Of a DNA stretch of 64,000 nucleotides, positions 184-59,200 are shown piece after piece (position 1 is the stretch's first letter; every line of letters starts with the position of its first letter). Location: contig OZ249437.1 in the NCBI GenBank assembly GCA_965235115.1, positions 30,628,001-30,692,000 of the forward strand, given 5' to 3'. This DNA comes from Laetmonice hystrix (taxonomy: Eukaryota). The notes below the pieces were generated by a model. It was not told the DNA's origin, made no database searches, and worked only from the letters and a program-made list of their open reading frames with translations. Position numbers and translations under genes: made by a program.

Positions 184-3100
184 TTCGCCATGCAAACGGG
201 CCTGGACTACCTGTCGATGAGAGCATGGGTGTGCATTTGGGTGACGGTCACCGCGGTCGTAATGGTGGCTGTAGAGGGCTCATTCATCGTCCGTTATTTC
301 ACGAGGTTTACCGTGGAAATATTCTCAGCTCTGATTTCGCTCATCTTTATATACGAGGTCGTTTATAAGCTATTCAAGGTGAGCCCCCTTTGATAACTTC
401 CGTCACCACTGCATGGGAAACATATTTATCGTAGTTGCCACGAGATTGTATTGTTTAGCTTTATAGAGTAAAATACGGTAGGCCTATAGACGATTTCTTC
501 TTTATATCTCAGGTGCGTGTCCAGGGGGAGGGGTCGAAGAGCCCCCGATCTTTTTTGTAGGTTGATATTGAAGCACGGGTGCTCCTGATGTGAGGCTTTG
601 ACCTCCACATCGTTGCCCCCCCTCTCCCCGCGATATATCGTGCACGTACGCGCCTGTATTTATATACCTATAAAGTTTCTTTTCAGGAAGGGTAGGCCTA
701 TTTGGGGTAAGATCTTTTTTTCATATTCACAATTTATACGCCTTATTAAGTAAGGTATTTTCCCGTTTTTTATTTGCCCACCAGGTGTTCCTCAGTCACC
801 CCCTTCAACCGTACTACCCACATCCCCTTCCTAATGGAGTTGACAGTTCCGCAAATTCTTCCATGGATGTCACTGTGGACCCAAATCTCACTGAGGTCTC
901 AGGAGAGTCTTTGAGAAATCCAAGCATTGTAAACCAGCCAAACACTGCCTTCCTGACTGTGATTCTTACTCTCGGCACGTTTTCCATCGCCTACTTTCTC
1001 AAACAGTTCCGTTACAGAAAGTTACTTTGGAAGAGTGTAAGTTGCCCACGTAGACAAATATTTTATATTCTAAACTTGGTAAACTTTTTTGGTGGGAGAT
1101 AGCTGATCAATTTCCAACTTTTCAGGCACGCCGAATACTGACAGACTTTGGTATCCCTATAGCCATTGTGGTAATGGTACTTGTTGACTTCTTAATTAAA
1201 GATACATACACTGAGGTTGGTAATCATCCTTTTAAAAGCAAACACCCAATATCTCTCATTTCAATGACTCTAAAATGCAATGCAGACATGGGGTGATAGG
1301 TTAGATAAGGCTTTAGACTACATGTATATCGACAGAAATGGAGAAATCTATAATGAAATTAAACATTTCAGTTGCCTGTTTTCGCTATAAAGCGATCGTC
1401 TTATGGCTGGTTGTTGACAAAATCGTTGACCTGACATTGACTTGAACAGTCCATGAAATTCATCGGACGATGAACCGATGAATTTCATTGTTCAAGTCCC
1501 TGCCAGGTCAACAACCAGCCACTAGACGATCGCTTCATAGCGGCATCAGGGCCCTGAAATGTTGAATTTCATTAGGTTCATCCATTTCTATGGGTATACA
1601 TTTATTGATTTATGTAGTCTCAGGCCTTTTGAGTCATTGAAATGGGAGATAGTCGGTATTCGCTTATTATTATTACAAGTAATAGTATATATCTCCTGAT
1701 GGACCTAGAGAATGCAGTGCTTATTTAGGTTCCCAGCTGTTGATGCACATGGTATAATTTCTAGGCTTCTGTCGCCCAACTGACAATTTGACAGAGTAAA
1801 AAAGACGGTGACGACTGAATACATGCAGTGATGTTTTCAGAAACTTTACGTTCCGTCTGGTGGGATCAAACCAACCAACGCTGCAGTACGTGGTTGGTTC
1901 ATCAATCCGCTAGGGGTACAGGCTCCGTTACCAATCTGGGCCATGTTCGCATCAGTCATCCCTGCCTTACTCGTCTTCATCCTGATATTCATGTCACATA
2001 TGATAACGGCGTAGGTAATGTATGGGCACTACCCCAAGTGTCAATGAGCATGGCGTATAATATGCTAACCATTGTTTATACAAATGGTGCAGAGAGAATA
2101 TGAAAATAAAACTCATCAAAGGTGGGGACAAGCTCGAGTAGGCCACTTACCTGTAGAACAAGCTGATCCATATTTCAGTAGGAGTACATGGTTAGTATAG
2201 CAGAATTTCTCATGCCCAACTCCGAAGAAACCCCCTTAATTCCGTTACCATACACCAGTATTTCCAGTGTTCAAATACCCCAAACGACAAAAAATTATAT
2301 TTCTCTAAGACATTTATAATGCTTTACATTTTAATTGTATTGATACATTTAGAATTATAGTCTTTCAAAAGAACAAGAAGGGTACGGGATTCCACCTGGA
2401 CCTTCTGCTGATTGGTGCGTTTGCCACGTTGGCGGGCCTGATCGGTGCACCTCTCATGGGAATTGGTCTGGTGCGCTCCGTCTCCCACGTGTCCTCACTC
2501 AGCATCTTCAGTCAGACTCACGCTCCTGGAGAGAGGCCCAAGCTGACAGGTGTCTACGAACAGCGGCTGACGGGACTGGCAGTCCACATAATGATTGGTG
2601 AGATTGGAGGCCCAATTCTGATTATCTCAGCGATTCTGTCCATCTTGCTTCCAAAGTTTTACTGTTACACTCCCTCCATGGACACGGAGCTGTGGGGGGG
2701 GGGGGGGGGGGGTCAATGAGCGGGTCAATGAGCGGAGTGAGACAAGAATTACTAGGAGAGAAAAGTTGGAGCGAGTTAGGCTGTGATCAATGTTAGGCTG
2801 CCCTCTCCCCCAAATCCTCTGATGTAAGTTAACAGATCCTCTGATGTAAGTTAACAGAGTGCCCTGGTGCTATTTCCAGGTGTGTCCGTGTTGATGGGAC
2901 CACTGCTGAGACAGATCCCTCTGGCCGTCCTGTTTGGTGTCTTCTTGTACATGGGCATCGCCTCCATGCGTGGCGTGCAGCTTTTTGAACGAGTGGAGTT
3001 GCTCTTCATGCCAAGGAAGCACCACCCTGACGTGTGCTATGTGAAACAGGTATAATGGAAGACTGTTTACCACCTCTGCTCAGGCACGGATACAATATGG

Positions 3101-4064
3101 GGGGGGGGGGGCGCTGGGGGTTTAAGCTCCTCCCTAGCTTGATCAATTTCGAATATTGGGGGGGGGGGGGGGGGAATGACCCCAGATCCCCAAAAGCGCA
3201 CCATATATACGGTGACGACAACTCTATGATCTCGCCACTCACCCAGTTTTGAAATCTGCTATTGTTTGGAGTTCTATGAAGGTCACTTTTGTAAGCTGAT
3301 CTTTTGAACTTCTCTGCATGAAAAATGTCTTCTTGCAGGTGAAAACTTACAAGATGCACATCTACACTTTGATTCAAGTGATCTGTCTTGCTGTGCTCTG
3401 GGCGGTCAAGTCAACAAAAGCCGCTCTAAGCTTTCCGTTTCTCCTGGTCCTATTGGTTCCACTCCGTCGTTACCTACTCCCAAAGATTTTCAGTGAATTG
3501 GAACTTCTCAATGTAAGCTGTTCTGTGACATTCCAAATTCAGGTATTTTTAACGGGCATCAGTCAATCCATACTGCGCGCACAAACGCAGTGCAGTTAAA
3601 AATACGAGACTATAGCTGGGAACTAATATTGTCTGTAAAGTTCTGGAAATTTGTTCAAAGTACATGGTGCCTGCCCTATACAAGCCACTCTTTGTATAAC
3701 AATGCATGCCTAGACATTTGGAAGACGTTCTTTTAGGCCTTTCTTCAAATTTAAGGTTTTTAAGAAATCTTTATTTTTAGATTTGACGCAAGCGCTCTAT
3801 TTCGTTGTATCTATAATGGCCTAGGGCAGGTTAGTTAGACAAGTCAAACCCCTAGTCAGTTCTCCGCAGTTATCGGAGAACTGACTATAGGGTGCCGATT
3901 TGTCTAACCAAAGGGCAGGTAGGCCTACCCCAGGACCTGCTCTTGGAACCCCGCCTGTTAGGCCTATAGTGATACAGCCGAATATTAATCTATTTATTTT
4001 CTAGCTGGACCGCAATGATGAAAACAGCAAGGTCGTTACTGACACCAAGGATGAACCAGATTGA
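184..4064 (+). CDS. SLC4 anion-exchanger family paralog 'SLC4-A'; 3' part only (TM4 to C-terminus), 5' exons lie left of the window
   Basis: Eight phase-consistent AG/GT exons: 184-378, 785-1036, 1126-1215, 1841-2010, 2353-2597, 2880-3049, 3339-3512, 4005-4064 (TGA at 4062-4064). Translation carries SLC4 membrane-domain motifs ([76 protein letters not shown]). Exon boundaries and phases match SLC4-B. Confidence 0.95.
1322..1601. mobile_element. Palindromic MITE in an SLC4-A intron
   Basis: Long imperfect inverted repeat (gctataaagcgatcgtc..tggctggttgttgac / gtcaacaaccagcca..gacgatcgcttcatagc) with a central perfect 14-bp stem atgaaattcatcgg/ccgatgaatttcat. Confidence 0.75.
2815..2858 (+). 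repeat. 22-nt minisatellite, 2 copies (TCCTCTGATGTAAGTTAACAGA)
   Basis: Two exact tandem units about 20 nt upstream of the 2880 acceptor; the same unit occurs 5 times at the homologous position in SLC4-B. Confidence 0.95.
3834..3908. repeat. Short palindromic hairpin element
   Basis: 14-bp stem tagtcagttctccg/cggagaactgacta with a 7-nt loop, plus an outer gttagacaa/ttgtctaac pair. Confidence 0.7.
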
Positions 4065-35205: not shown

Positions 35206-38200
35206 TCAAACAGGCATGTGCGCCTGCTGGTAGAAATCTGGTTCATCCTCTCCATCATTAACGTCGTCAGTACCGTCATCATCTCGGTCGAGCTAGAAGG
35301 ATATCAATCAAGATTTCAATGCATCATTACGAAACAACCCCTCATATCATATAACATATTACAGAAATCGATGAATAAACCAACTGGGTTAGAGGGGGCA
35401 TATGTTATTCTATACATTAGAAGCGGTGCTATGTTCTTCAATTACGTACGGTTTACATTAAAACTGTGGCTCCGGTTTCAAGATGAAATGACTTACATTG
35501 CTGAGCTCTTTCTCAGTAAAGCATCGTGGCAGGAGAAAACTACGTAGAGGAACCATGAGGATGAGGAAGAAGGGGAATCCCAGGGCGGCTTCTGTGGACT
35601 TCACGGCCCAGAGTACAGCAAGACAGATCAACTGGACCAACGTGTAAAGGTGCATCTTGTGGGTCTTCACCTGTAAAACGTATATGGTGGTGGTGGGGGT
35701 TAATAAACCATTTACATCAATAGAGCAACCTATCCACTTCACGTAGAATTGACAATAATAACTCTGGTCTGCTTGACAATATTGACATAAAGTTCATTAA
35801 ACGCTAGTATAAAAAAATGACCTACCCGCTTCACATAGCACACGCCAGGGTGGTGCTTCCTTGGCATGAACAGCAACTCGACTCGTTCAAAGAGCTGTAC
35901 ACCACTCATGGAGGCGATTCCCATGTACAAGAAGACACCAAACAGGACGGCCAGAGGGATCTGTCTCAGCAGTGGGCCCATCAACACGGACACACCTGGA
36001 AATAGCAGCAGGGCACTCTGTTAACTTACATCAGAGGATCTGTTAACTTACATCAGAGAATCTGTTAACTTACATCAGAGGATCTGTTAACTTACATCAG
36101 AGGATCTGTTAACTTACATCAGAGGATCTGTTTTTGATGGCAAATCAAAAATGGAGAGGAAAAGGGACCATAGGGGGGAGATAGGGGAAGGAGACCTCCG
36201 AGATATTCTCACCAATCATTATGTGGACTGCCAGTCCGGTCAGCCGCTGTTCGTAGACACCTGTCAGCTTGGGCCTCTCTCCAGGAGCGTGAGTCTGACT
36301 GAAGATGCTGAGTGAGGACACGTGGGAGACGGAGCGCACTGTGGCCACCACCATGAGAGGTGCACCGATCAGGCCCGCCAACGTGGCAAACGAACCAATC
36401 AACAGAAGGTCCAGGTGGAATCCCGTACCCTTCTTACTTTTTCGACTGACTATCATTCTGCATGGACAAAAAAAAAACATAGGTTAATAAAATACAGAAC
36501 ACCAAAATTAAACATAAAAAAAAGTCCGTACTACTTTGGTAGACTTTGGCGTCATCTGTTATTCAGCACTTTTCCTGAACTACCTCTTCCTTTCAACAGA
36601 CCATGGGCCAAGTGTTATTGACGGAGTCGTGTACACTTACCCTGTTATCATGCACTCCATGAATATCAGGATGAAGACGAGTAAGGCAGGGATGACTGAT
36701 GCGAATATGGCCCAGATTGGTAACGGAGCCTGTACCCCTAGCGGATTGATGAACCAACCACGTACTGCAGCATTGGTTGGTGTGATCCCACCAGACGGAA
36801 CGTAAAGTTTCTGTAAATATAGATTCCTCTTTATAATCTCAATTTTGAGCAGGATGCACTGCAAATAATCTAATAAATGTATACTCGAATAAGTACCCTG
36901 GCGTTTATGTAATCGAGCATATAATTGGATTTTTGAATCACAATCGATTCATAATGCAGGTAAGCCTATTTTGTGGTACATCGCCACAAACACGAAATCT
37001 GGTTGAAAGTAACTATCCATAGCCCTGACCTTATCCCTAGCTCCTAACCCGGGTCCCTACACCTCCCAAAATATTCCTGTCCTATCCCTGACCTTAACCC
37101 GAACCCCTACCCACAATTTTTGAGGGAAAGTTACCATGGGGGAATAACCTATTTTGGACCGTAATTCTTTGCCACAGACCTATAATCTGCCATCTGACAA
37201 AAGAAGCTAAGAGTTTTCGCCTTCGGAGCGAAAAGGGGAACTTAATAAGTTGGAATTTTTATTTATATTGGCCTACATGTTTCGGACCTGCCACGGTCCT
37301 TCATCATTCCTCAGGTTATAGGTCAGTGTCAAAGAACTGTACATAATAGGCCTACCTGCAAGGCACTTTTTACCTTGGTATATCACCAGCAAATCATACG
37401 GCAGAAACACTAAGTAGTACACAATCACATTGACTACATTCCTCCTACTAACAACAAAGGTTTCAACTTGAATACGAAATCATAAATAAGTCTGTTAGCT
37501 CTCTACTATTGTTACATACCTCAGTGTATGTATCCTTGATAAGGAAGTCAAGGAGCACCATTACTAAAATGGCTATAGGGATACCAAAGTCTCCCAGAGC
37601 TCGGCGTGCCTGAAAAGTTGAAATTTAATGCTACTACAAATTTAACAACAGCATCAGTAACGATAATCTCCGGCACATTTTATGTTACATCCTCGACGAA
37701 AGATCAACGTGATCATGAAACCTTTTCTTCAAAGTTCTCTTGTAGGTTACTGCTAATAACGGAATTCCCAATTAAACCCGTTTCATGAAGCAACAAGTAA
37801 ACAACAATTCCTCTATTATTCAAATTTGAATCTTGTCCTAGTAACAAGTAGAAGTCTGGTACTGAACCTGGTAAGACCTACCATCACAGTTTCCCAGGCC
37901 CAGTTTACAAGCAGAATCAATCAAATTGAAGTCACAAGCTGAGGTTATATAAGCTCCCGCAGGATAAAACCTTTCTTCAGCATGCCCACTAAGTATTTTA
38001 TACGTATTCATAGCCACACCACTTAAATTATTTGCAGATCAAAATTGTTCTCAAACTCAAGAGTGGCCAAAGTTTGGAACACATGGGATACCATTTGACC
38101 AGAGTGGTACGGCAGTTACAGGGGGCTAAGTCTCATAGAACATTTGAAATCCTACAAACTTACAGAACTTATTATATGCCATTCAGACAATTTATCTTAT

Positions 38201-41200
38201 TATTTATTTCTGTAAAACTTCTGATGGATCTGATATGTGGACATGAATTTTTGTTTCTTTACCGACTATTTTGGTCATCAGAAATTTTTCTGCTTCTGAT
38301 TTTAATGAGCCTAGGCTAGGAACTTTGCGTGTGAACCGGGCCAAAAGCTACCGGGGGGTAATTTGTTTTAATTTCCTCCTTATAATACCTAGCTGTAACT
38401 GACTTGTTACCCTGAATTAAATCTCAATAATCTAATCTCAATAACAGTACTGTAGATCTTACCTGGGGATATGTTTGGTACAATTACATACCGGTAATTT
38501 TCCATTTTTGCTTAGTAAACGAAACGAAACGGACCAAGTCTAATATATCTCCAGACAATAGCCACATTACTGGCCCTGCATTAGCTGATTACCGATTTTT
38601 GCCAAAACGTGAGAGTAATATTATTACCCTTGTTACCTGGGGTCAATGACGGGCAACTTACACTCCTGCCAAGGAACTTGCTGTTACGGAACTGTTTGAG
38701 AAAGTAGGCGATGAAAAACGTGCCGAGTGTAAGGATCACAGACAGCAAGGCAGTGTTTGGTTGGTTTTCAAGGTTCCGGTTTCCTGGCAACTCTTCTGAG
38801 GCCTCAGTGACATTTGGGCCTAAAGTGACAACTTCCATGGAAGAGTTTTCGAAACTGTCAAATCCATTAGGAATGGGTGGAGGGTAGTATGGTTGAAGGG
38901 GGTGACTGAGGAAGACCTGGTGAACAAACAGAAATCATGTCAAAACCTTGCTGTTTCAGTGGTTCGGATCAGACTAATTTAACAACTGTTTCAATTACTA
39001 TACATAGAACTTCCAGGTGAACCATGCTTTATCGCTTGTGAACCTGCAAGGAAATTACAAAATTGCAGTGGCATTTATTTTGTGTCATTTCTTTTTACTC
39101 TTGCCCAAAAATTACTGTTAATATCAAAATATCATTAAAGTAGATCTTGAGGGTTGATTACTATGCTACCAGATTTAAACAACTCATTATTTCCATTTTG
39201 AAAGCATCTGACTTTCTTTCTTCTTTTATCAAACAATCAATATACCTTGTAAAGCTTGTAAAAGACTTCATATATAAAGATGAGAGAAATCAAAGATGCA
39301 AATATCTCCATGGTAAATCTGGTGAAGTATTGGACAAGGAAGGAACCCTCGGCAGCCACAATGACAATGGCGATGACTGTCACCCAAATGCACACCCACG
39401 CTCTCATCGACAGGTAGTCCAGGCCCATCTGAAGGGTGAACTGGAACCACAAAGGGGTGCAAACATAGTTCTCACGATATTTCTATTTTCATTAAATGAA
39501 GTACATGTATACATACAAGTTCATGCAGAATAGAGCCATCTAAAACACTTGTTTTGAGACATGTTAAAAGTAAAGTAAGCTATTCATCACACGATTCATT
39601 TACTCATTACATATTTGATAAATTTCATCTTCAGATTAGAAGATGGGACAAAGATATTAGCAATTAAAACTGAGAGCTGGGCACAGCAGTAAGGGTGGCA
39701 GGGGTGTGGACATGTGCGCCCCCCCCCCCCCGACCTGCTTTTATACCGACACTGCAACTTTAAATGAACTCGCTCAGATTTGGGCGCTCTACGCCTTTTG
39801 TCCTCCAAAACATAACGTTTCCAAATAGGGGGATGGAAATTTCTACCTGATAGAGGCCCTCTTCAAAGACAATGATGGGCCCAGTACATCCGACGATAAG
39901 CAACGGTTGGGCAGACAACAGGGCGAACACGACACCACTGATGGAGGTCAGGATGAGTAGCTCGCTCACTCCTAACATTTTGTCGGTCTTCTCACCTTCA
40001 AATAGAAAATACTGTCATCGACCGGGCTAGGAGGGGTCACGTACTGGAGCATGGAAGTACCCTCTACAGTTGGACACTTACGACATCAAAGATATATCAT
40101 TTATTTTTATTCCCTTACTGAAAGCATAATTGATGATGATAAAGAAAACAATCTTCCTGAAAATTCATTAGCTCTAAACATACTGAGTAGACCCCCGAAG
40201 GTGATAGCAGGTGAAAGGCAGGCGAAGTAGATGAAGAAGAAGGTGGCCAGACACTGAAGGTTGAGACCGTCCCGGATGTCGCTCCAGTACTTAGGGAACC
40301 TCCGCCGGATATCATTGACGACTCCACCAAACGGACGCTTTGTACGTTTGAGAGGGTCTCCAAACGGATCGTCTTCTGGCACAGGCGCTGAAATGAACAC
40401 GTGAACTCGTTCATGTAGGTGCAATCTCTACTACAGAATATAAAGTCATCTCATACCTAGCCAAATGGGTTGTCCTCAGTTTTAGTAGTTGCAAAGGATG
40501 GAGAAGATTGAAAATGTAAAGGAGCGTCTTCTCCTAAAGGTAGTAACAAGAACAACAGCTTACAGCTTTTATAGCCACTTCTTGTTACTAAGTTGGGGTA
40601 AGTAACTTAGCAAAGGTAAGTCTCATACATACGTAGTTTTTCCTTGGTTTTCAGTTCTCTCTTCTTTGCCTTCTCCCGCGCCATATCCATGATGGGAAGA
40701 AGTGTTTCTTTGTCCCAATCTCCAGGGGGCAGCACCAACGAATCGTCAAGGAATTCATTAATGGCACCAAGGAGATCTTCACGGCTGTCTGCTTGATATG
40801 CTACGTCATGGAACCTCTGAAAGCAGTTTCCTCGAGATGTAAACGCTCTTCAAAATGACCACCCAGGCTTAAATTGAGAACAGGTCATTGAAATGGTACA
40901 ATGGTAACACTGCTATGACTCACCGTATTTGCCATCAATGTGGAGATAGAGCGTCCAATCTGGTGGTAATCCAGCGAGCCGCTTTCCGGTCCCATCAGCA
41001 CAAACAAGAATCGCACCGGCAATGGTACTTCGGTCAAGTTACCTAGGTATTGTCCCTTTGCTAACCGCACAAACGCCATGACTGGTTTCTCCAAGAAGTC
41101 AACAGAACCGACCAGAACTGATGTGGCTTCTGCTCCCTTTGGGATCTTACGTAGGATGGGGCCACTGAGTCCAGGGCTCTGGGGCTCGGCTGGAGGAGTC

Positions 41201-56200: not shown

Positions 56201-59200
56201 TTTCTTTCACCGCGCATTTGATTCGCTTTATTTTTCATTTATGTTAAGCTGAGGTGATAACAAAAACAATCCTGAAGGTTTGGCCAAATGGTCTGTTTTT
56301 TATGACCTTTCCATGTCGAGGTGGCAATTTTGAACACATTTTGAAAAGGTCATAAAAAAACATTTGAACTGCAGCACCCAAACTTTCAGGCTGTTTTGTT
56401 ATCAACTCAGCATAACATGAATGAAAATAAAGCGAATCTCTTATCAGTTGTGAAAACGACAAACACTTTTATGGGTTGCATTCATTTCTGGTCACCCTGT
56501 GGCTTTGCTGTTATAAATGGCTTTGCATGGAGATCAATATTATTGCCCCTGCCCTGACCATTATAACCATCATAACCATACTATGTCCATATAGAAGCGA
56601 CTTGTGACAACCCCGAAATAAGGTAACTGGATAGTAGGGAGGTAACTTTTTTCTCATGTGATCCCTGAACTAACGGCCAATAAAGGTAATTTGTTTCGGA
56701 GACTGACCCCTGTTTGCCACCATACTTACAATGGTCTGCCATTCATTTGGACTAGGGTAGTCGTTGAGGTCGGTTGTGGAAACTTGGAAATCCTTTCCAC
56801 TTTACCAGGTATTCCACACCTATAGCTGCCTTTTATTATCTTTTCAAGCTCATATACGTCGGGTTCCTCCCAAAGGATTGCTATTCTCGTGACGGCTGCA
56901 TCATTTATAAAGGCATTTGATTCCCCTACCGAAGACTTTACCGGTTCCAAAAATGAATCTTTGGGGGGATGCACATCCGTCAAGCGTTTTAGTTTTATAG
57001 CTATTTCTCGCTGTGCACGCAGCAGCGGTCGTTCATCCAGATCCAATTCTTCCCGCACTCTACCCTTCTTAAGGCGTCGTGCATGGATCGGGATGGACAG
57101 AATGTTCTTTTGTTACATAATTTATTAGCCAGAAATGTAACTGTCCTTCTGCTTTCACAATTCTATACGGGCCGTGTCAACTGTGAATTAGGAGCTAAAG
57201 AAAAACCTTTACGATTCATTCGTACATAGAGGAATACAATGTCCCCCACGGAGAGATTTATCGGTTGTGCTCGCTTATTAAACGTCTTACCATATTGTTC
57301 TCGGTTTTCTTTTGAATTCTGCTTTGCTATTTCTCGCACTTTTTTCAGATTCGAGAAAAATTGCAGGTAATCTCGGATATTTGGTTGCGGTCTAAGAACA
57401 GTGTCTATCGCCCTATTAGGTTCTCTTCCTAACATGAGATAATTTGGGGAATATCCCGTCAATTGTCCTGGCATAGCGTTTATACAACCGGCTCCATGGT
57501 GACGATTTCAAGAACTTCGGGTTCTGGAGTTGTGCCTAGGATGGGTTGACGTTGGGTTGTATCGTGTTTGTGTGACTGGCATTCTGGGCAAGTTTGTACA
57601 TAATTGTATACGTTTTTATTTAATTTTCGCAGTATTACTTCGAAACCATGATTTATAACTCCCTTTCCATCCAAAAGATAGTCCACTGCTGATAAAATTA
57701 TACTTCTTGCTTCTTGATCGTCAACTGGTAATGCTTTGTTTTCCAAGTAATCTACAAGAATTTCAATGTTTGTGTCTTTTCTTTGCATTGTTACTGTACG
57801 CGGAATCAACACTATTTTCCCGTGGCTCATCTATCGTATCATGTGTGTTCGGTGTAGGTGTGGTGTCTGCTGGTTGTTTTTATTTTAAAAAAGAGATCCG
57901 ACAATTTCACAATACATGTATATTTTTTTTATGGAACAAACAGTATTTTTTTATGTAGTTTGATGACCAAACCTGTGTTTGTTAAAAAGATTATTGTTAA
58001 AAAAAAACAAAAAAACATAGCCCCCCCCCCCCCTATCAAATGGTCCGGACCAAACTGAAAATATAAAACCATTTGGTCTGTCCAACAGGACATTACTGAA
58101 ACTGTAGACAGCATCCGACCTGGCCAGTCCGATAAGGCCCAGCTCCACTGATAATAGCCCAGCATCCAAGGATGGCCTTTACTCTACGGTCCACGGTCAA
58201 TTATGAAACCGTGCTTGCACTAGTCCCATAAACTAGATCAAAGTCCAAGGTCAGTTGTGAAACTAAGCCCATGACTTACTGAAGACAGCTTGCGACTATC
58301 ACATCTTTCACACTCTGTTTATCATCTGTACTGCATTCTCGGCTGCTTGGGCTTCTACCAGTCAGGTGTAGCCCATGACGATGCGGGAATGGTTGAAACG
58401 ACAGCAGTCAAGTAGGGGCCTACAGCTTTAGGCAGTAGCTTGTGTCAATGCCATAAATTTTGACGGGAAAAAACTAATGGCAGTTTGGTCTGCCACCGAA
58501 TACATCTGATGTTGTCGAGCTACCTTCAAACAACATGTAGGCTTACTATAATGAAAACGCATAATTGACCAACTGACCCAGCCATGCAATCCATATAACT
58601 TTGAAAAGAAATTCATATAGTCCCAACCCAAGGTTTTTTTAACCGAAACGCCAGTGTTTTATGTCAGTATCATCCAGATATTTTACAGTTGCTTATGGAC
58701 ATTATTTGACAAGACATTCCTGAAAACCTCATTCGTTTTCAACTTTAATTTGCCTCCAACTTCTAGCTTTAATCTTGGGTCATGGTAACAGCAATCTAGA
58801 CAGTGTAATCCCGAAATGACATTGTATTCTTCGATGGTTTGGATGGCAGCTTTAAAACCAGAATTGTTCGAACAATAGTAGCAGGACCTCCGTAGGGGCA
58901 AAGTTAGAGAACCTTAATTGAATTGTTGTAACAATAATAAAAGGGCATCCATATAGGGACACAATTAGACAACGTTAATTCCCCGAATTTTAGCACCTCT
59001 TTGATGCAGCGTCCAACGCCAATGTGTCCGTTTCACAACTGACTATTCAATCTCCTCTATGCCAATGTTCAGTCAAGCGTTTTCAGTCCTTTGAGTCTGG
59101 CAACAAGATATTTTCAGTACTTTTGTCCACTAAGGGCTTGGACCAATAGCTGACCAGGATTATTTTGTTCTATTTTATTGGTTGGTTTGAGACCTTTCCT

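What the first reader, a model, noticed from the sequence alone, without database searches (positions are those of the whole stretch)
2353..2476. Second binding-site island: TM10 GIGL-VR in SLC4-A versus VVAT-VR in SLC4-B
Seen: 9 of 12 nt differ at 2459-2470 versus 36351-36340, flanked by 98-99% identical sequence. The start of the same exon also differs in a burst (IIVFQKN versus MIVSRKS). Known: this stretch aligns with AE1 S725-A726-T727-T728-V729-R730, the TM10 N-terminus that forms the anion pocket together with TM3 and E681. R730 is retained in both copies, but the T728 equivalent is Leu in A. Inference: TM8 and TM10, which face each other across the substrate cavity, changed together, which argues for pocket redesign rather than decay.
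Basis: partly seen in the sequence, partly recalled or inferred. Interest (0 to 1): 0.8.

Follow-up and report, generated by a model that had tools for sequence, protein, structure and literature searches.

The report
Old pocket codons spared by gene conversion
Two neighbouring copies of an anion-transporter gene in a worm genome keep overwriting each other's exons, yet a few codons that line the ion-binding pocket stay different. This suggests the shorter copy keeps an altered pocket, though no one has yet shown that it is expressed or what it carries.

Summary
In exon 7 (2353-2597), copy A differs from copy B at 19 of 243 coding bases. Nine differences lie in 2460-2470 (G-I-G-L versus V-V-A-T), seven in 2356-2374 and three elsewhere (permutation p < 5e-6).

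The island aligns without gaps to AE1 S725-T728, and V729-R730 are kept. It is not a fresh burst. All 6 third-codon positions in the TM10 and TM8 islands differ, against 3 of 121 in the surrounding converted sequence. Synonymous divergence between A and B ranges from about 0.03 to over 2 among exons. This is patchy, exon-limited gene conversion that left old divergence at pocket residues.

A is intact over its ten TMD exons but lacks the N-terminal cytoplasmic domain. Three further copies 10 Mb away share that truncation, the loss of the TM8 acid (41 of 41 database relatives keep E or D) and a G-[I/V]-G start to TM10. The TM3 motif of A is unchanged.

Pocket change rather than decay is supported. 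"Changed together" is not shown, and the burst at the exon start lies outside the pocket. No RNA data, structural model or transport assay could be obtained. Divergence peaks under gene conversion are a known signature; this natural SLC4 pocket variant appears undescribed.

The parts
2459..2470 (+). TM10 island of copy A: GGA ATT GGT CTG = G-I-G-L, equivalent to AE1 S725-T728. The next two codons, V-R (V729-R730), are unchanged.
   Evidence: All four third-codon positions differ from B. The GGA codon is shared with paralogs C, D and E.
36340..36351 (-). TM10 island of copy B: GTG GTG GCC ACA = V-V-A-T, close to the family consensus x-A-A-T.
   Evidence: The closest external relatives read T-V-A-T-V-R or V-A-A-T-V-R.
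2353..2597 (+). Exon 7 of copy A (TM9-TM11). The converted cores 2375-2458 and 2471-2596 have pS 0.03-0.04 against B.
   Evidence: Pfam PF00955, 85 bits.
2356..2374 (+). Burst at the exon-7 start (I-I-V-F-Q-K-N versus M-I-V-S-R-K-S), in the cytoplasmic TM8-TM9 loop. Here A is the derived copy.
   Evidence: B, C, D, E and the outgroup all read M-I-[IV]-x-[KR]-K.
1841..2010 (+). Exon 6 of copy A (TM8). The core 1841-1993 has pS 0.026 against B.
1994..1999 (+). TM8 island of copy A: TCA CAT = S-H, where B has GAG TGC = E-C (window 36657-36652, minus strand). Equivalent to AE1 E681-S682. All 6 bases differ.
   Evidence: the end of exon 6 aligns to AE1 685. E or D in 41 of 41 relatives.
2011..2352 (+). 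Intron 6 of copy A. It cannot be aligned with B's intron 6. Together with 1994-2010 and 2353-2374 it forms one unconverted genomic segment.
2880..3049 (+). Exon 8 of copy A (TM12). It has 11 scattered, mostly synonymous differences from B (dS 0.22), consistent with an older conversion.
2811..2879 (+). The last 69 nt of intron 7, shared with B at 94-100%. It includes a 22-nt tandem array: 2 copies in A, 5.3 in B at 36017-36132.
   Evidence: This shows that homogenisation acts on DNA and can reach into an intron.
184..4064 (+). Copy A, exons 3-10 inside the window: 184-378, 785-1036, 1126-1215, 1841-2010, 2353-2597, 2880-3049, 3339-3512, 4005-4064. Exons 1-2 lie left of the window at G000:C2:30622498-30622701 and 30627690-30627838.
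   Evidence: All splice sites are AG/GT. The reading frame is open for 569 codons and ends in a stop.
35206..40387 (-). Copy B, the ten TMD exons: 40387-40184, 39995-39847, 39440-39246, 38916-38662, 37609-37520, 36810-36641, 36457-36213, 35995-35826, 35670-35497, 35292-35206.
40915..41160 (-). Exon of copy B that encodes part of the N-terminal Band 3 cytoplasmic domain. Copy A has no counterpart.
   Evidence: PF07565, 125 bits. The genome holds only five such exons, none near A, C, D or E. Nothing similar lies in the 24 kb upstream of A.

Best explanation
**The genes.** A and B are convergent paralogs of an AE-type SLC4 anion exchanger. Their 3' ends lie about 31 kb apart. B is the full-length, conservative copy. 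A encodes only the membrane domain.

**The process.** Interlocus gene conversion, confined to the exons where homology survives, has repeatedly overwritten A and B. It was most recent in exons 6-7. It has not replaced the few codons that set A's anion site apart:
- E681/S682 equivalents are S-H in A.
- S725-T728 equivalents are G-I-G-L in A.

These codons carry old, saturated divergence. The most likely reason they persist is selection against convertants that would restore a B-type pocket. This matches the known 'peak of divergence' signature of neofunctionalised duplicates under gene conversion.

**Origin.** A probably belongs, by function and perhaps by descent, with three other membrane-domain-only paralogs (C, D, E). 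These also lack the TM8 acid and begin TM10 with G-[I/V]-G.

**Predicted function (inferred, not shown).** A keeps R730, K851 and the TM3 cap, but it lacks the TM8 carboxylate and the TM10 hydroxyls. By analogy with AE1 in which E681 is neutralised, A should not be a normal electroneutral Cl-/HCO3- exchanger. It more likely handles divalent or other anions, or works electrogenically, with the new His as a possible titratable group.

**Shown:** the anatomy, the mosaic divergence, the age of the islands and the intactness of A. **Inferred:** selection as the cause, and the change in substrate or coupling.
For: - Differences cluster strongly.
- Synonymous divergence between A and B by exon 1-10 is 0.24, 0.43, 0.81, 0.27, 0.40, 0.10, 0.125, 0.22, 2.2 and 0.87.
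- The converted cores have pS 0.026-0.043, while A-C and B-C are 0.40-0.55 over the same codons.
- Third-codon positions differ at 6 of 6 in the islands against 3 of 121 in the cores, p = 1.6e-8.
- Identity stops at the exon edges, except for 69 nt of intron 7.
- The islands coincide with S1-site residues. My rough chance estimate for two patches of that size hitting those residues is 0.003.
- A is intact with canonical splice sites. In unconverted exon 9, dN is 0.17 and dS is 2.2. A's protein distance to C is similar to B's.
- C, D and E changed the same positions: Q-Y in TM8, and GVGT, GITS or GIGS in TM10. They share the GGA codon and the N-terminal truncation with A.
- E or D is universal at the TM8 site (41 of 41), and none of 150 relatives has G-I-G.
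- The least-converted exons place A with C and D, with support 82/71 (exons 9-10) and 89/75 (exons 3, 9, 10).
- Precedents exist for divergence peaks under gene conversion (PMC3924837; bioRxiv 10.1101/2020.08.04.234435; PMC3728101).
- Neutralising E681 turns AE1 from a monovalent into an electrogenic divalent-anion exchanger (PMC8714990).
Against: - No RNA run holds either copy, so A's expression, its 5' end and its start codon are unknown.
- A discontinuous tract can arise without selection. A cluster of 9 mismatches in 11 nt can block heteroduplex formation or be repaired back.
- One of the three unconverted patches, the exon-7 start, is not a pocket site.
- The AU test does not reject A+B as sisters in the unconverted exons (p = 0.25-0.29). 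Shared-derived sites are mixed: AB 7, AC 5, BC 2.
- A's TM8 codons (TCA CAT) resemble neither B's nor C's, so common descent of that island is not shown.
- There is no GC3 excess in the converted exons.
- No structure was modelled and no transport data exist.
Confidence: 0.55

Rival explanations
1. Patchy conversion without selection. A is a silent or functionless partial duplicate whose exons are kept open only because B keeps overwriting them. The islands are spots where dense mismatches mechanically stop heteroduplex formation or are repaired back to the recipient sequence.
For: No RNA evidence exists. A lacks the N-terminal domain and the last nine or so residues of the tail. One unconverted patch is a non-pocket loop. 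Islands with 75-100% mismatch are poor substrates for heteroduplex formation (general knowledge of recombination).
Against: Exon 9 is unconverted (pS 0.71), yet it is open and conserved at the protein level (pN 0.15). All ten exons keep AG/GT splice sites. Mismatch density had to build up at these exact codons first. They are the most conserved positions in the family. Three other truncated copies are also intact.
Confidence: 0.2
2. A recent adaptive burst, which is what the first reader's wording implies. After A and B were homogenised, positive selection quickly drove many substitutions into TM8 and TM10 together.
For: Five to six non-synonymous steps lie in four TM10 codons and four in two TM8 codons, at pocket sites.
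Against: The islands also carry the synonymous-type changes expected only from long divergence: GGA not GGG, GGT not GGC, CTG not CTA. Third positions differ at 6 of 6 against 3 of 121 in the flanks. G-[I/V]-G with the same GGA codon is already present in C, D and E, which are far diverged from A (A-C pS 0.40-0.47 over the codons of exons 6-7 where A and B are converted).
Confidence: 0.08
3. Micro-conversion from the C/D/E cluster. A short tract copied from a paralog 10 Mb away put G-I-G into an otherwise B-like exon.
For: A shares GGA-AT[T/C]-GG with paralog E over eight of nine bases. The donor cluster lies on the same chromosome.
Against: The shared stretch is at most 9 nt, and the flanks of C, D and E are about 27% different from A's. 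The fourth island codon and the TM8 island do not match C, D or E. Tracts that short, between sequences that diverged, are not expected.
Confidence: 0.07
4. A is a non-transporting partner. The membrane-domain-only protein pairs with B, since SLC4 proteins are dimers, and acts as a regulator. Conversion keeps the dimer interface matched while the pocket is free to drift.
For: The gate-domain exons are well conserved or converted. The pocket has lost its key acid. C, D and E have lost the Arg as well.
Against: A keeps R730, K851 and the TM3 cap unchanged, which argues that anion binding is retained. Free drift would not stay confined to six codons.
Confidence: 0.1

Closest known systems
SLC4A1-3 (AE1-AE3) Cl-/HCO3- exchangers
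   Same: Copy B matches them in the membrane domain at E about 1e-19 to 1e-13 per exon. It keeps the S1 site: the TM3 T-G-P cap, the TM8 Glu, and TM10 x-A-T-V-R. It also has a Band 3 cytoplasmic domain. Copy A shares the fold family (PF00955), R730, K851 and the TM3 cap.
   Different: Copy A has Ser-His for E681-S682 and G-I-G-L for S725-T728. It has no cytoplasmic domain and a shortened C-terminal tail.
AE1 with E681 neutralised (Woodward's reagent K/borohydride; mouse E699Q)
   Same: The TM8 carboxylate is removed while R730 stays, as in copy A. Paralogs C, D and E carry exactly E to Q.
   Different: Those are laboratory modifications of a full-length protein with a normal TM10. A also rebuilt the TM10 cap, and C, D and E lost the Arg.
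Duplicates held apart by selection under gene conversion: red/green opsins, RHD/RHCE, ATP1A1 paralogs of Leptodactylus frogs, GOT1 of Tigriopus
   Same: Near-identical paralogs carry narrow peaks of divergence at residues that set function.
   Different: Here the introns cannot be aligned, so conversion is limited to the exons. The paralogs are inverted and unequal in length. Selection is inferred from one genome only, without population or cross-species data.
N-terminally shortened SLC4 isoforms (e.g. kidney AE1; from my own knowledge, not checked here)
   Same: Part or all of the cytoplasmic domain is missing while the membrane domain is intact.
   Different: Those are alternative-promoter products of one gene with a normal pocket. 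A, C, D and E are separate genes with no cytoplasmic-domain exons nearby.

Membership tests
SLC4 bicarbonate/anion transporter family (Pfam PF00955) | Significant match of the membrane domain to the family profile | tested here: met
   A exons 3, 6, 7 and 9 score 40-85 bits against a cut-off of 27. B exon 7 scores 97 bits. PDB matches are AE1-3, NBC and NDCBE proteins.
SLC4 bicarbonate/anion transporter family (Pfam PF00955) | Acidic residue in TM8 at the AE1 E681 / NBCe1 Asp position | tested here: not met
   Copy A has Ser, and C, D and E have Gln. Copy B has Glu. 41 of 41 database relatives have E or D.
SLC4 bicarbonate/anion transporter family (Pfam PF00955) | TM10 N-terminal motif x-A-[AT]-T-V-[R/L] | tested here: inconclusive
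   A keeps V-R but has G-I-G-L in place of x-A-A-T. B has V-V-A-T-V-R. None of 150 relatives has G-I-G.
SLC4 bicarbonate/anion transporter family (Pfam PF00955) | TM3 N-terminal [ST]-G-P cap | tested here: met
   A and B both read V-G-C-T-G-P.
SLC4 bicarbonate/anion transporter family (Pfam PF00955) | N-terminal Band 3 cytoplasmic domain (PF07565), typical of animal SLC4 | tested here: not met
   For copy A there is no match in the 24 kb upstream, and none of the genome's five such exons is near A. Copy B meets this feature.
SLC4 bicarbonate/anion transporter family (Pfam PF00955) | 7+7 inverted-repeat fold with a core and a gate domain | not tested
Paralogs with a selected divergence peak under interlocus gene conversion | Strong heterogeneity of synonymous divergence along the gene | tested here: met
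   dS ranges from about 0.03 to 2.2 among segments.
Paralogs with a selected divergence peak under interlocus gene conversion | The peak coincides with residues that determine function | tested here: met
   The islands are the E681/S682 and S725-T728 equivalents, which are S1-site or adjacent residues.
Paralogs with a selected divergence peak under interlocus gene conversion | The peak persists across species or in population samples despite ongoing conversion | not testable with these tools
   Only one sample of this species was found. No close relative with an A-type copy was found.

The most novel reading that the evidence does not exclude
A, C, D and E form a lineage-specific clade of SLC4 transporters that lack the cytoplasmic domain. 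They have dispensed with the otherwise universal TM8 carboxylate and rebuilt the TM10 anion cap as a glycine-rich G-x-G turn. This would make them a new substrate or coupling class, for example proton-independent exchange of divalent or sulfur oxyanions. In A, this pocket has been defended codon by codon against overwriting by the neighbouring canonical gene.
Probability: 0.3. Interest if true: 0.7.

Novelty: new variant of a known kind. Interest (0 to 1): 0.5.

Why it matters
If A is expressed and transports, nature has already done a six-residue swap in the SLC4 anion site on an almost isogenic background. A and B are 98-99% identical on either side of the islands. That would mark out which residues set substrate choice and coupling, which remains an open question for this family. 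It would also add a clear example, within a transporter, of selection holding functional codons against gene conversion. Four genes encoding only the membrane domain would also show that the cytoplasmic domain can be dispensed with for some role in this animal. If A is silent, the case is a caution: mismatch-dense patches can survive conversion without any function.

Tried and rejected
- **Expression.** Two searches of public runs found only DNA contigs from one sample and no RNA. The single read-laying run confirmed the DNA but said nothing on expression. Its apparent variants at 1869, 1879 and 1945 are cross-laid contigs of B. The one at 2417 looks like bubble-popping in a contig rather than a polymorphism.
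- **A-like or C-like relatives elsewhere.** The exhaustive search with B's exon found no G-I-G among 150 hits. The word-index search with A's exon found nine hits, all canonical. The search with C's exon found nothing.
- **Resolving A+B versus A+CDE.** Trees of the unconverted exons favour A with C and D, but the AU test does not reject A+B. Shared-derived site counts are mixed.
- **GC-biased conversion.** There is no GC3 excess in the converted exons.
- **Assembly artefact.** Rejected, because contigs join the island to A-specific intron sequence.
- **Pseudogene decay.** Rejected as the main reading, because the frame is open and the splice sites are canonical.
- **Earlier notes of this scan.** None exist for this place or for SLC4.
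- **Between and beside the genes.** ORFs in the 31 kb between A and B gave no family match. Further right, at window 57483-57830 on the far side of B, one ORF is a weak retroelement integrase fragment.
- **Structure modelling and docking.** Not run. A spliced protein cannot be handed to the folding tools by reference, and I did not type it in.
Full report
**1. The observation**

- A 2459-2470 reads GGA ATT GGT CTG (G-I-G-L).
- B 36351-36340 on the minus strand reads GTG GTG GCC ACA (V-V-A-T).
- That is 9 of 12 bases different. Both are followed by GTG CGC (V-R).

On a codon alignment of the whole exon, A and B differ at 19 of 243 bases.

| Place in A | Differences |
|---|---|
| 2460-2470 | 9 |
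| 2356-2374 (I-I-V-F-Q-K-N versus M-I-V-S-R-K-S) | 7 |
| 2408, 2417, 2572 | 3 |

None of 200,000 random placements put nine differences into any 12-nt window.

The exon aligns without gaps to AE1 residues 693-771. The island is therefore S725-A726-T727-T728, followed by V729-R730, and the T728 equivalent is Leu in A. DNA contigs from three public runs of one sample carry A's island attached to A's own intron. The island is not an assembly chimera.

**2. The genes**

The window lies in a 627-Mb genome. Earlier notes of this scan call it an annelid; I did not check this.

Gene models built from tblastn matches and splice-site inspection give two convergent SLC4 genes.
- **Copy B** (minus strand) has a Band 3 cytoplasmic domain (PF07565) and ten membrane-domain exons.
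- **Copy A** (plus strand) has the same ten exons, all with AG/GT splice sites, and an open frame of 569 codons. Exons 1-2 lie left of the window.
- No cytoplasmic-domain exon lies in the 24 kb upstream of A. The genome's only five such exons belong to B and to four canonical SLC4 genes elsewhere.

Three more paralogs (C, D, E) lie at G000:C2:20.66-20.78 Mb.
- They start at the same exon as A and also lack the cytoplasmic domain.
- C and D are intact over all ten exons. E was recovered for seven exons.

The five genes form one well-supported clade against AE-like proteins of other animals (100/99).

**3. What the pocket looks like**

| Position (AE1 numbering) | B | A | C | D | E |
|---|---|---|---|---|---|
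| TM8, E681-S682 | E-C | S-H | Q-Y | Q-Y | Q-Y |
| TM10, S725-R730 | V-V-A-T-V-R | G-I-G-L-V-R | G-V-G-T-V-T | G-I-T-S-A-S | G-I-G-S-A-S |

- Among database relatives, 41 of 41 have E or D at the TM8 site. None of 150 has G-I-G.
- The nearest outside genes are two to three full-length copies in another assembly. They read F-M-E-S-Q-I-T-G and T-[V/F]-A-T-V-R.
- B is therefore the conservative copy, and A, C, D and E are derived.

The literature places these residues at the anion site.
- The S1 site of AE1 is S465, G466, I528, F532, E681, T727-V729 and R730. The TM10 backbone NH groups and the T727 hydroxyl hold the anion (PMC13263692; bioRxiv 10.1101/2022.02.11.480130).
- S725, T727 and T728 are the polar side chains near the site.
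- S725 lies close to E681, and S725R abolishes transport (PMC8714990).

**4. How the pattern arose**

Synonymous divergence between A and B varies widely among exons.

| Exon | 1 | 2 | 3 | 4 | 5 | 6 | 7 | 8 | 9 | 10 |
|---|---|---|---|---|---|---|---|---|---|---|
| dS, A vs B | 0.24 | 0.43 | 0.81 | 0.27 | 0.40 | 0.10 | 0.125 | 0.22 | 2.2 | 0.87 |

- With the islands removed, the cores of exons 6 and 7 have pS 0.026-0.043. A-C and B-C are 0.40-0.55 over the same codons.
- The introns do not align at all, except for the last 69 nt of intron 7, which includes a shared 22-nt tandem array.
- This is mosaic interlocus gene conversion of different ages, limited to the exons where homology survives.

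The islands are not new.
- All six third-codon positions in the two islands differ, against 3 of 121 in the cores (Fisher p = 1.6e-8).
- Several island changes are of the synonymous kind that a quick adaptive burst would not need: GGA rather than GGG, GGT rather than GGC, CTG rather than CTA.
- A's first island codon, GGA, is shared with C, D and E, and its G-I-G with E.
- The islands are therefore old divergence that conversion has skipped.

The TM8 island (1994-1999), the rest of exon 6, the unalignable intron 6 and the exon-7 start burst (to 2374) form one continuous unconverted genomic segment. The burst at the exon start is therefore not an independent event, and it lies in a cytoplasmic loop. 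The TM10 island is a separate 11-nt hole inside otherwise 98-99% identical sequence.

**5. Selection or mechanics**

The rough chance that a two-codon patch and a four-codon patch would fall on E681 and on T727-R730 is about 0.003 (my own simple estimate).

Evidence that A is maintained:
- A is intact.
- Its unconverted exon 9 is conserved at the protein level (pN 0.15 against pS 0.71).
- Its protein distance to C is about the same as B's.

A peak of divergence at functional residues in converting duplicates is a described signature of selection. Examples are the opsins, RHD/RHCE, the ATP1A1 paralogs of toad-eating frogs and GOT1 of Tigriopus. I therefore favour selection against convertants.

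The mechanical alternative is not excluded. Dense mismatches can block heteroduplex formation or be repaired back. I found no RNA data to show that A is used.

**6. Descent**

- Trees of the least-converted exons place A with C and D (82/71 and 89/75). The converted exons place A with B (91/77).
- The AU test does not reject A+B (p = 0.25-0.29).
- Shared-derived sites are mixed: AB 7, AC 5, BC 2.
- A shares four features with C, D and E: the same N-terminal truncation point, a shortened C-terminal tail, loss of the TM8 acid and G-[I/V]-G. These make a single origin of the truncated, pocket-altered lineage, later overwritten by B in A, somewhat more likely than not. I put this at about 0.6.
- A's TM8 codons (TCA CAT) match neither B's nor C's.

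**7. Function (inferred)**

Removing the charge of E681 in AE1 nearly abolishes monovalent exchange and makes Cl-/SO4 2- exchange electrogenic and proton-independent (PMC8714990).

What A keeps and loses:
- A keeps R730, K851 and the TM3 cap.
- A replaces the acid by Ser, puts a His next to it, and turns the TM10 cap into a glycine-rich, hydroxyl-free turn.

I predict that A is not a standard Cl-/HCO3- exchanger. It is more likely a transporter of divalent or other anions, or an electrogenic one. A role as a non-transporting dimer partner is a lesser alternative.

**8. Verdict**

- The words "burst" and "changed together" are not supported.
- The TM3 prediction is negative.
- The evolutionary pattern is a known kind. 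The natural pocket variant and the genes encoding only the membrane domain appear undescribed, within the limits of my searches.

Noticed in passing
window 2814-2858 (+) and 36017-36132 (-): A 22-nt tandem array (unit ATCCTCTGATGTAAGTTAACAG, which holds a donor-like GTAAGT and an acceptor-like AACAG) sits just upstream of exon 8 in both copies. A has 2 units and B has 5.3. It resembles the splice-junction-seeded minisatellites noted elsewhere in this genome.
   Followed up: partly
G000:C2:20661086-20668500 (C), 20681693-20689149 (E), 20764529-20780100 (D); loci L003-L005, L011-L019: Three more SLC4 paralogs lack the cytoplasmic domain. D and E also changed TM3 (N-C-T-T-V-F for G-C-T-G-P) and TM1 (I-T-L-S-G for I-T-F-G-G), and all three lost the TM10 Arg. 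E was found only up to exon 7.
   Followed up: partly
L006 (G000:C29:20046887-20050072), minus strand: A canonical SLC4 gene has an open-frame minisatellite (peptide unit R-P-Q-F-L-G-V-R-Y-V-Q-T-Q, more than ten copies). It starts at the donor end of the exon homologous to exon 7.
   Followed up: no
G000:C2:30622473 (left of the window; locus L016): Copy A has an in-frame ATG 27 nt upstream of its first membrane-domain codon, inside what is intron in B. An in-frame stop lies further upstream. C, D and E have no such ATG, so they must use unknown upstream exons.
   Followed up: partly
window 4005-4064 (+) versus 35292-35206 (-): A's C-terminal tail stops nine residues before B's (…D-E-P-D stop versus …[13 protein letters not shown] stop). 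C and D also end near this point, so all truncated copies lack the terminal M-P-V.
   Followed up: no
L023 and L025 (ENA ERZ25767047, contig ctg38987, 52 kb apart); L024 on a second contig: A related organism's assembly holds two to three full-length, canonical copies of the B-type gene with the same exon structure. They make a useful near outgroup.
   Followed up: partly
window 57483-57830 (-): This ORF gives a weak match to the integrase zinc-binding domain (PF17921, below the cut-off). It is probably a decayed retroelement on the far side of B's 5' (N-terminal) exons.
   Followed up: no
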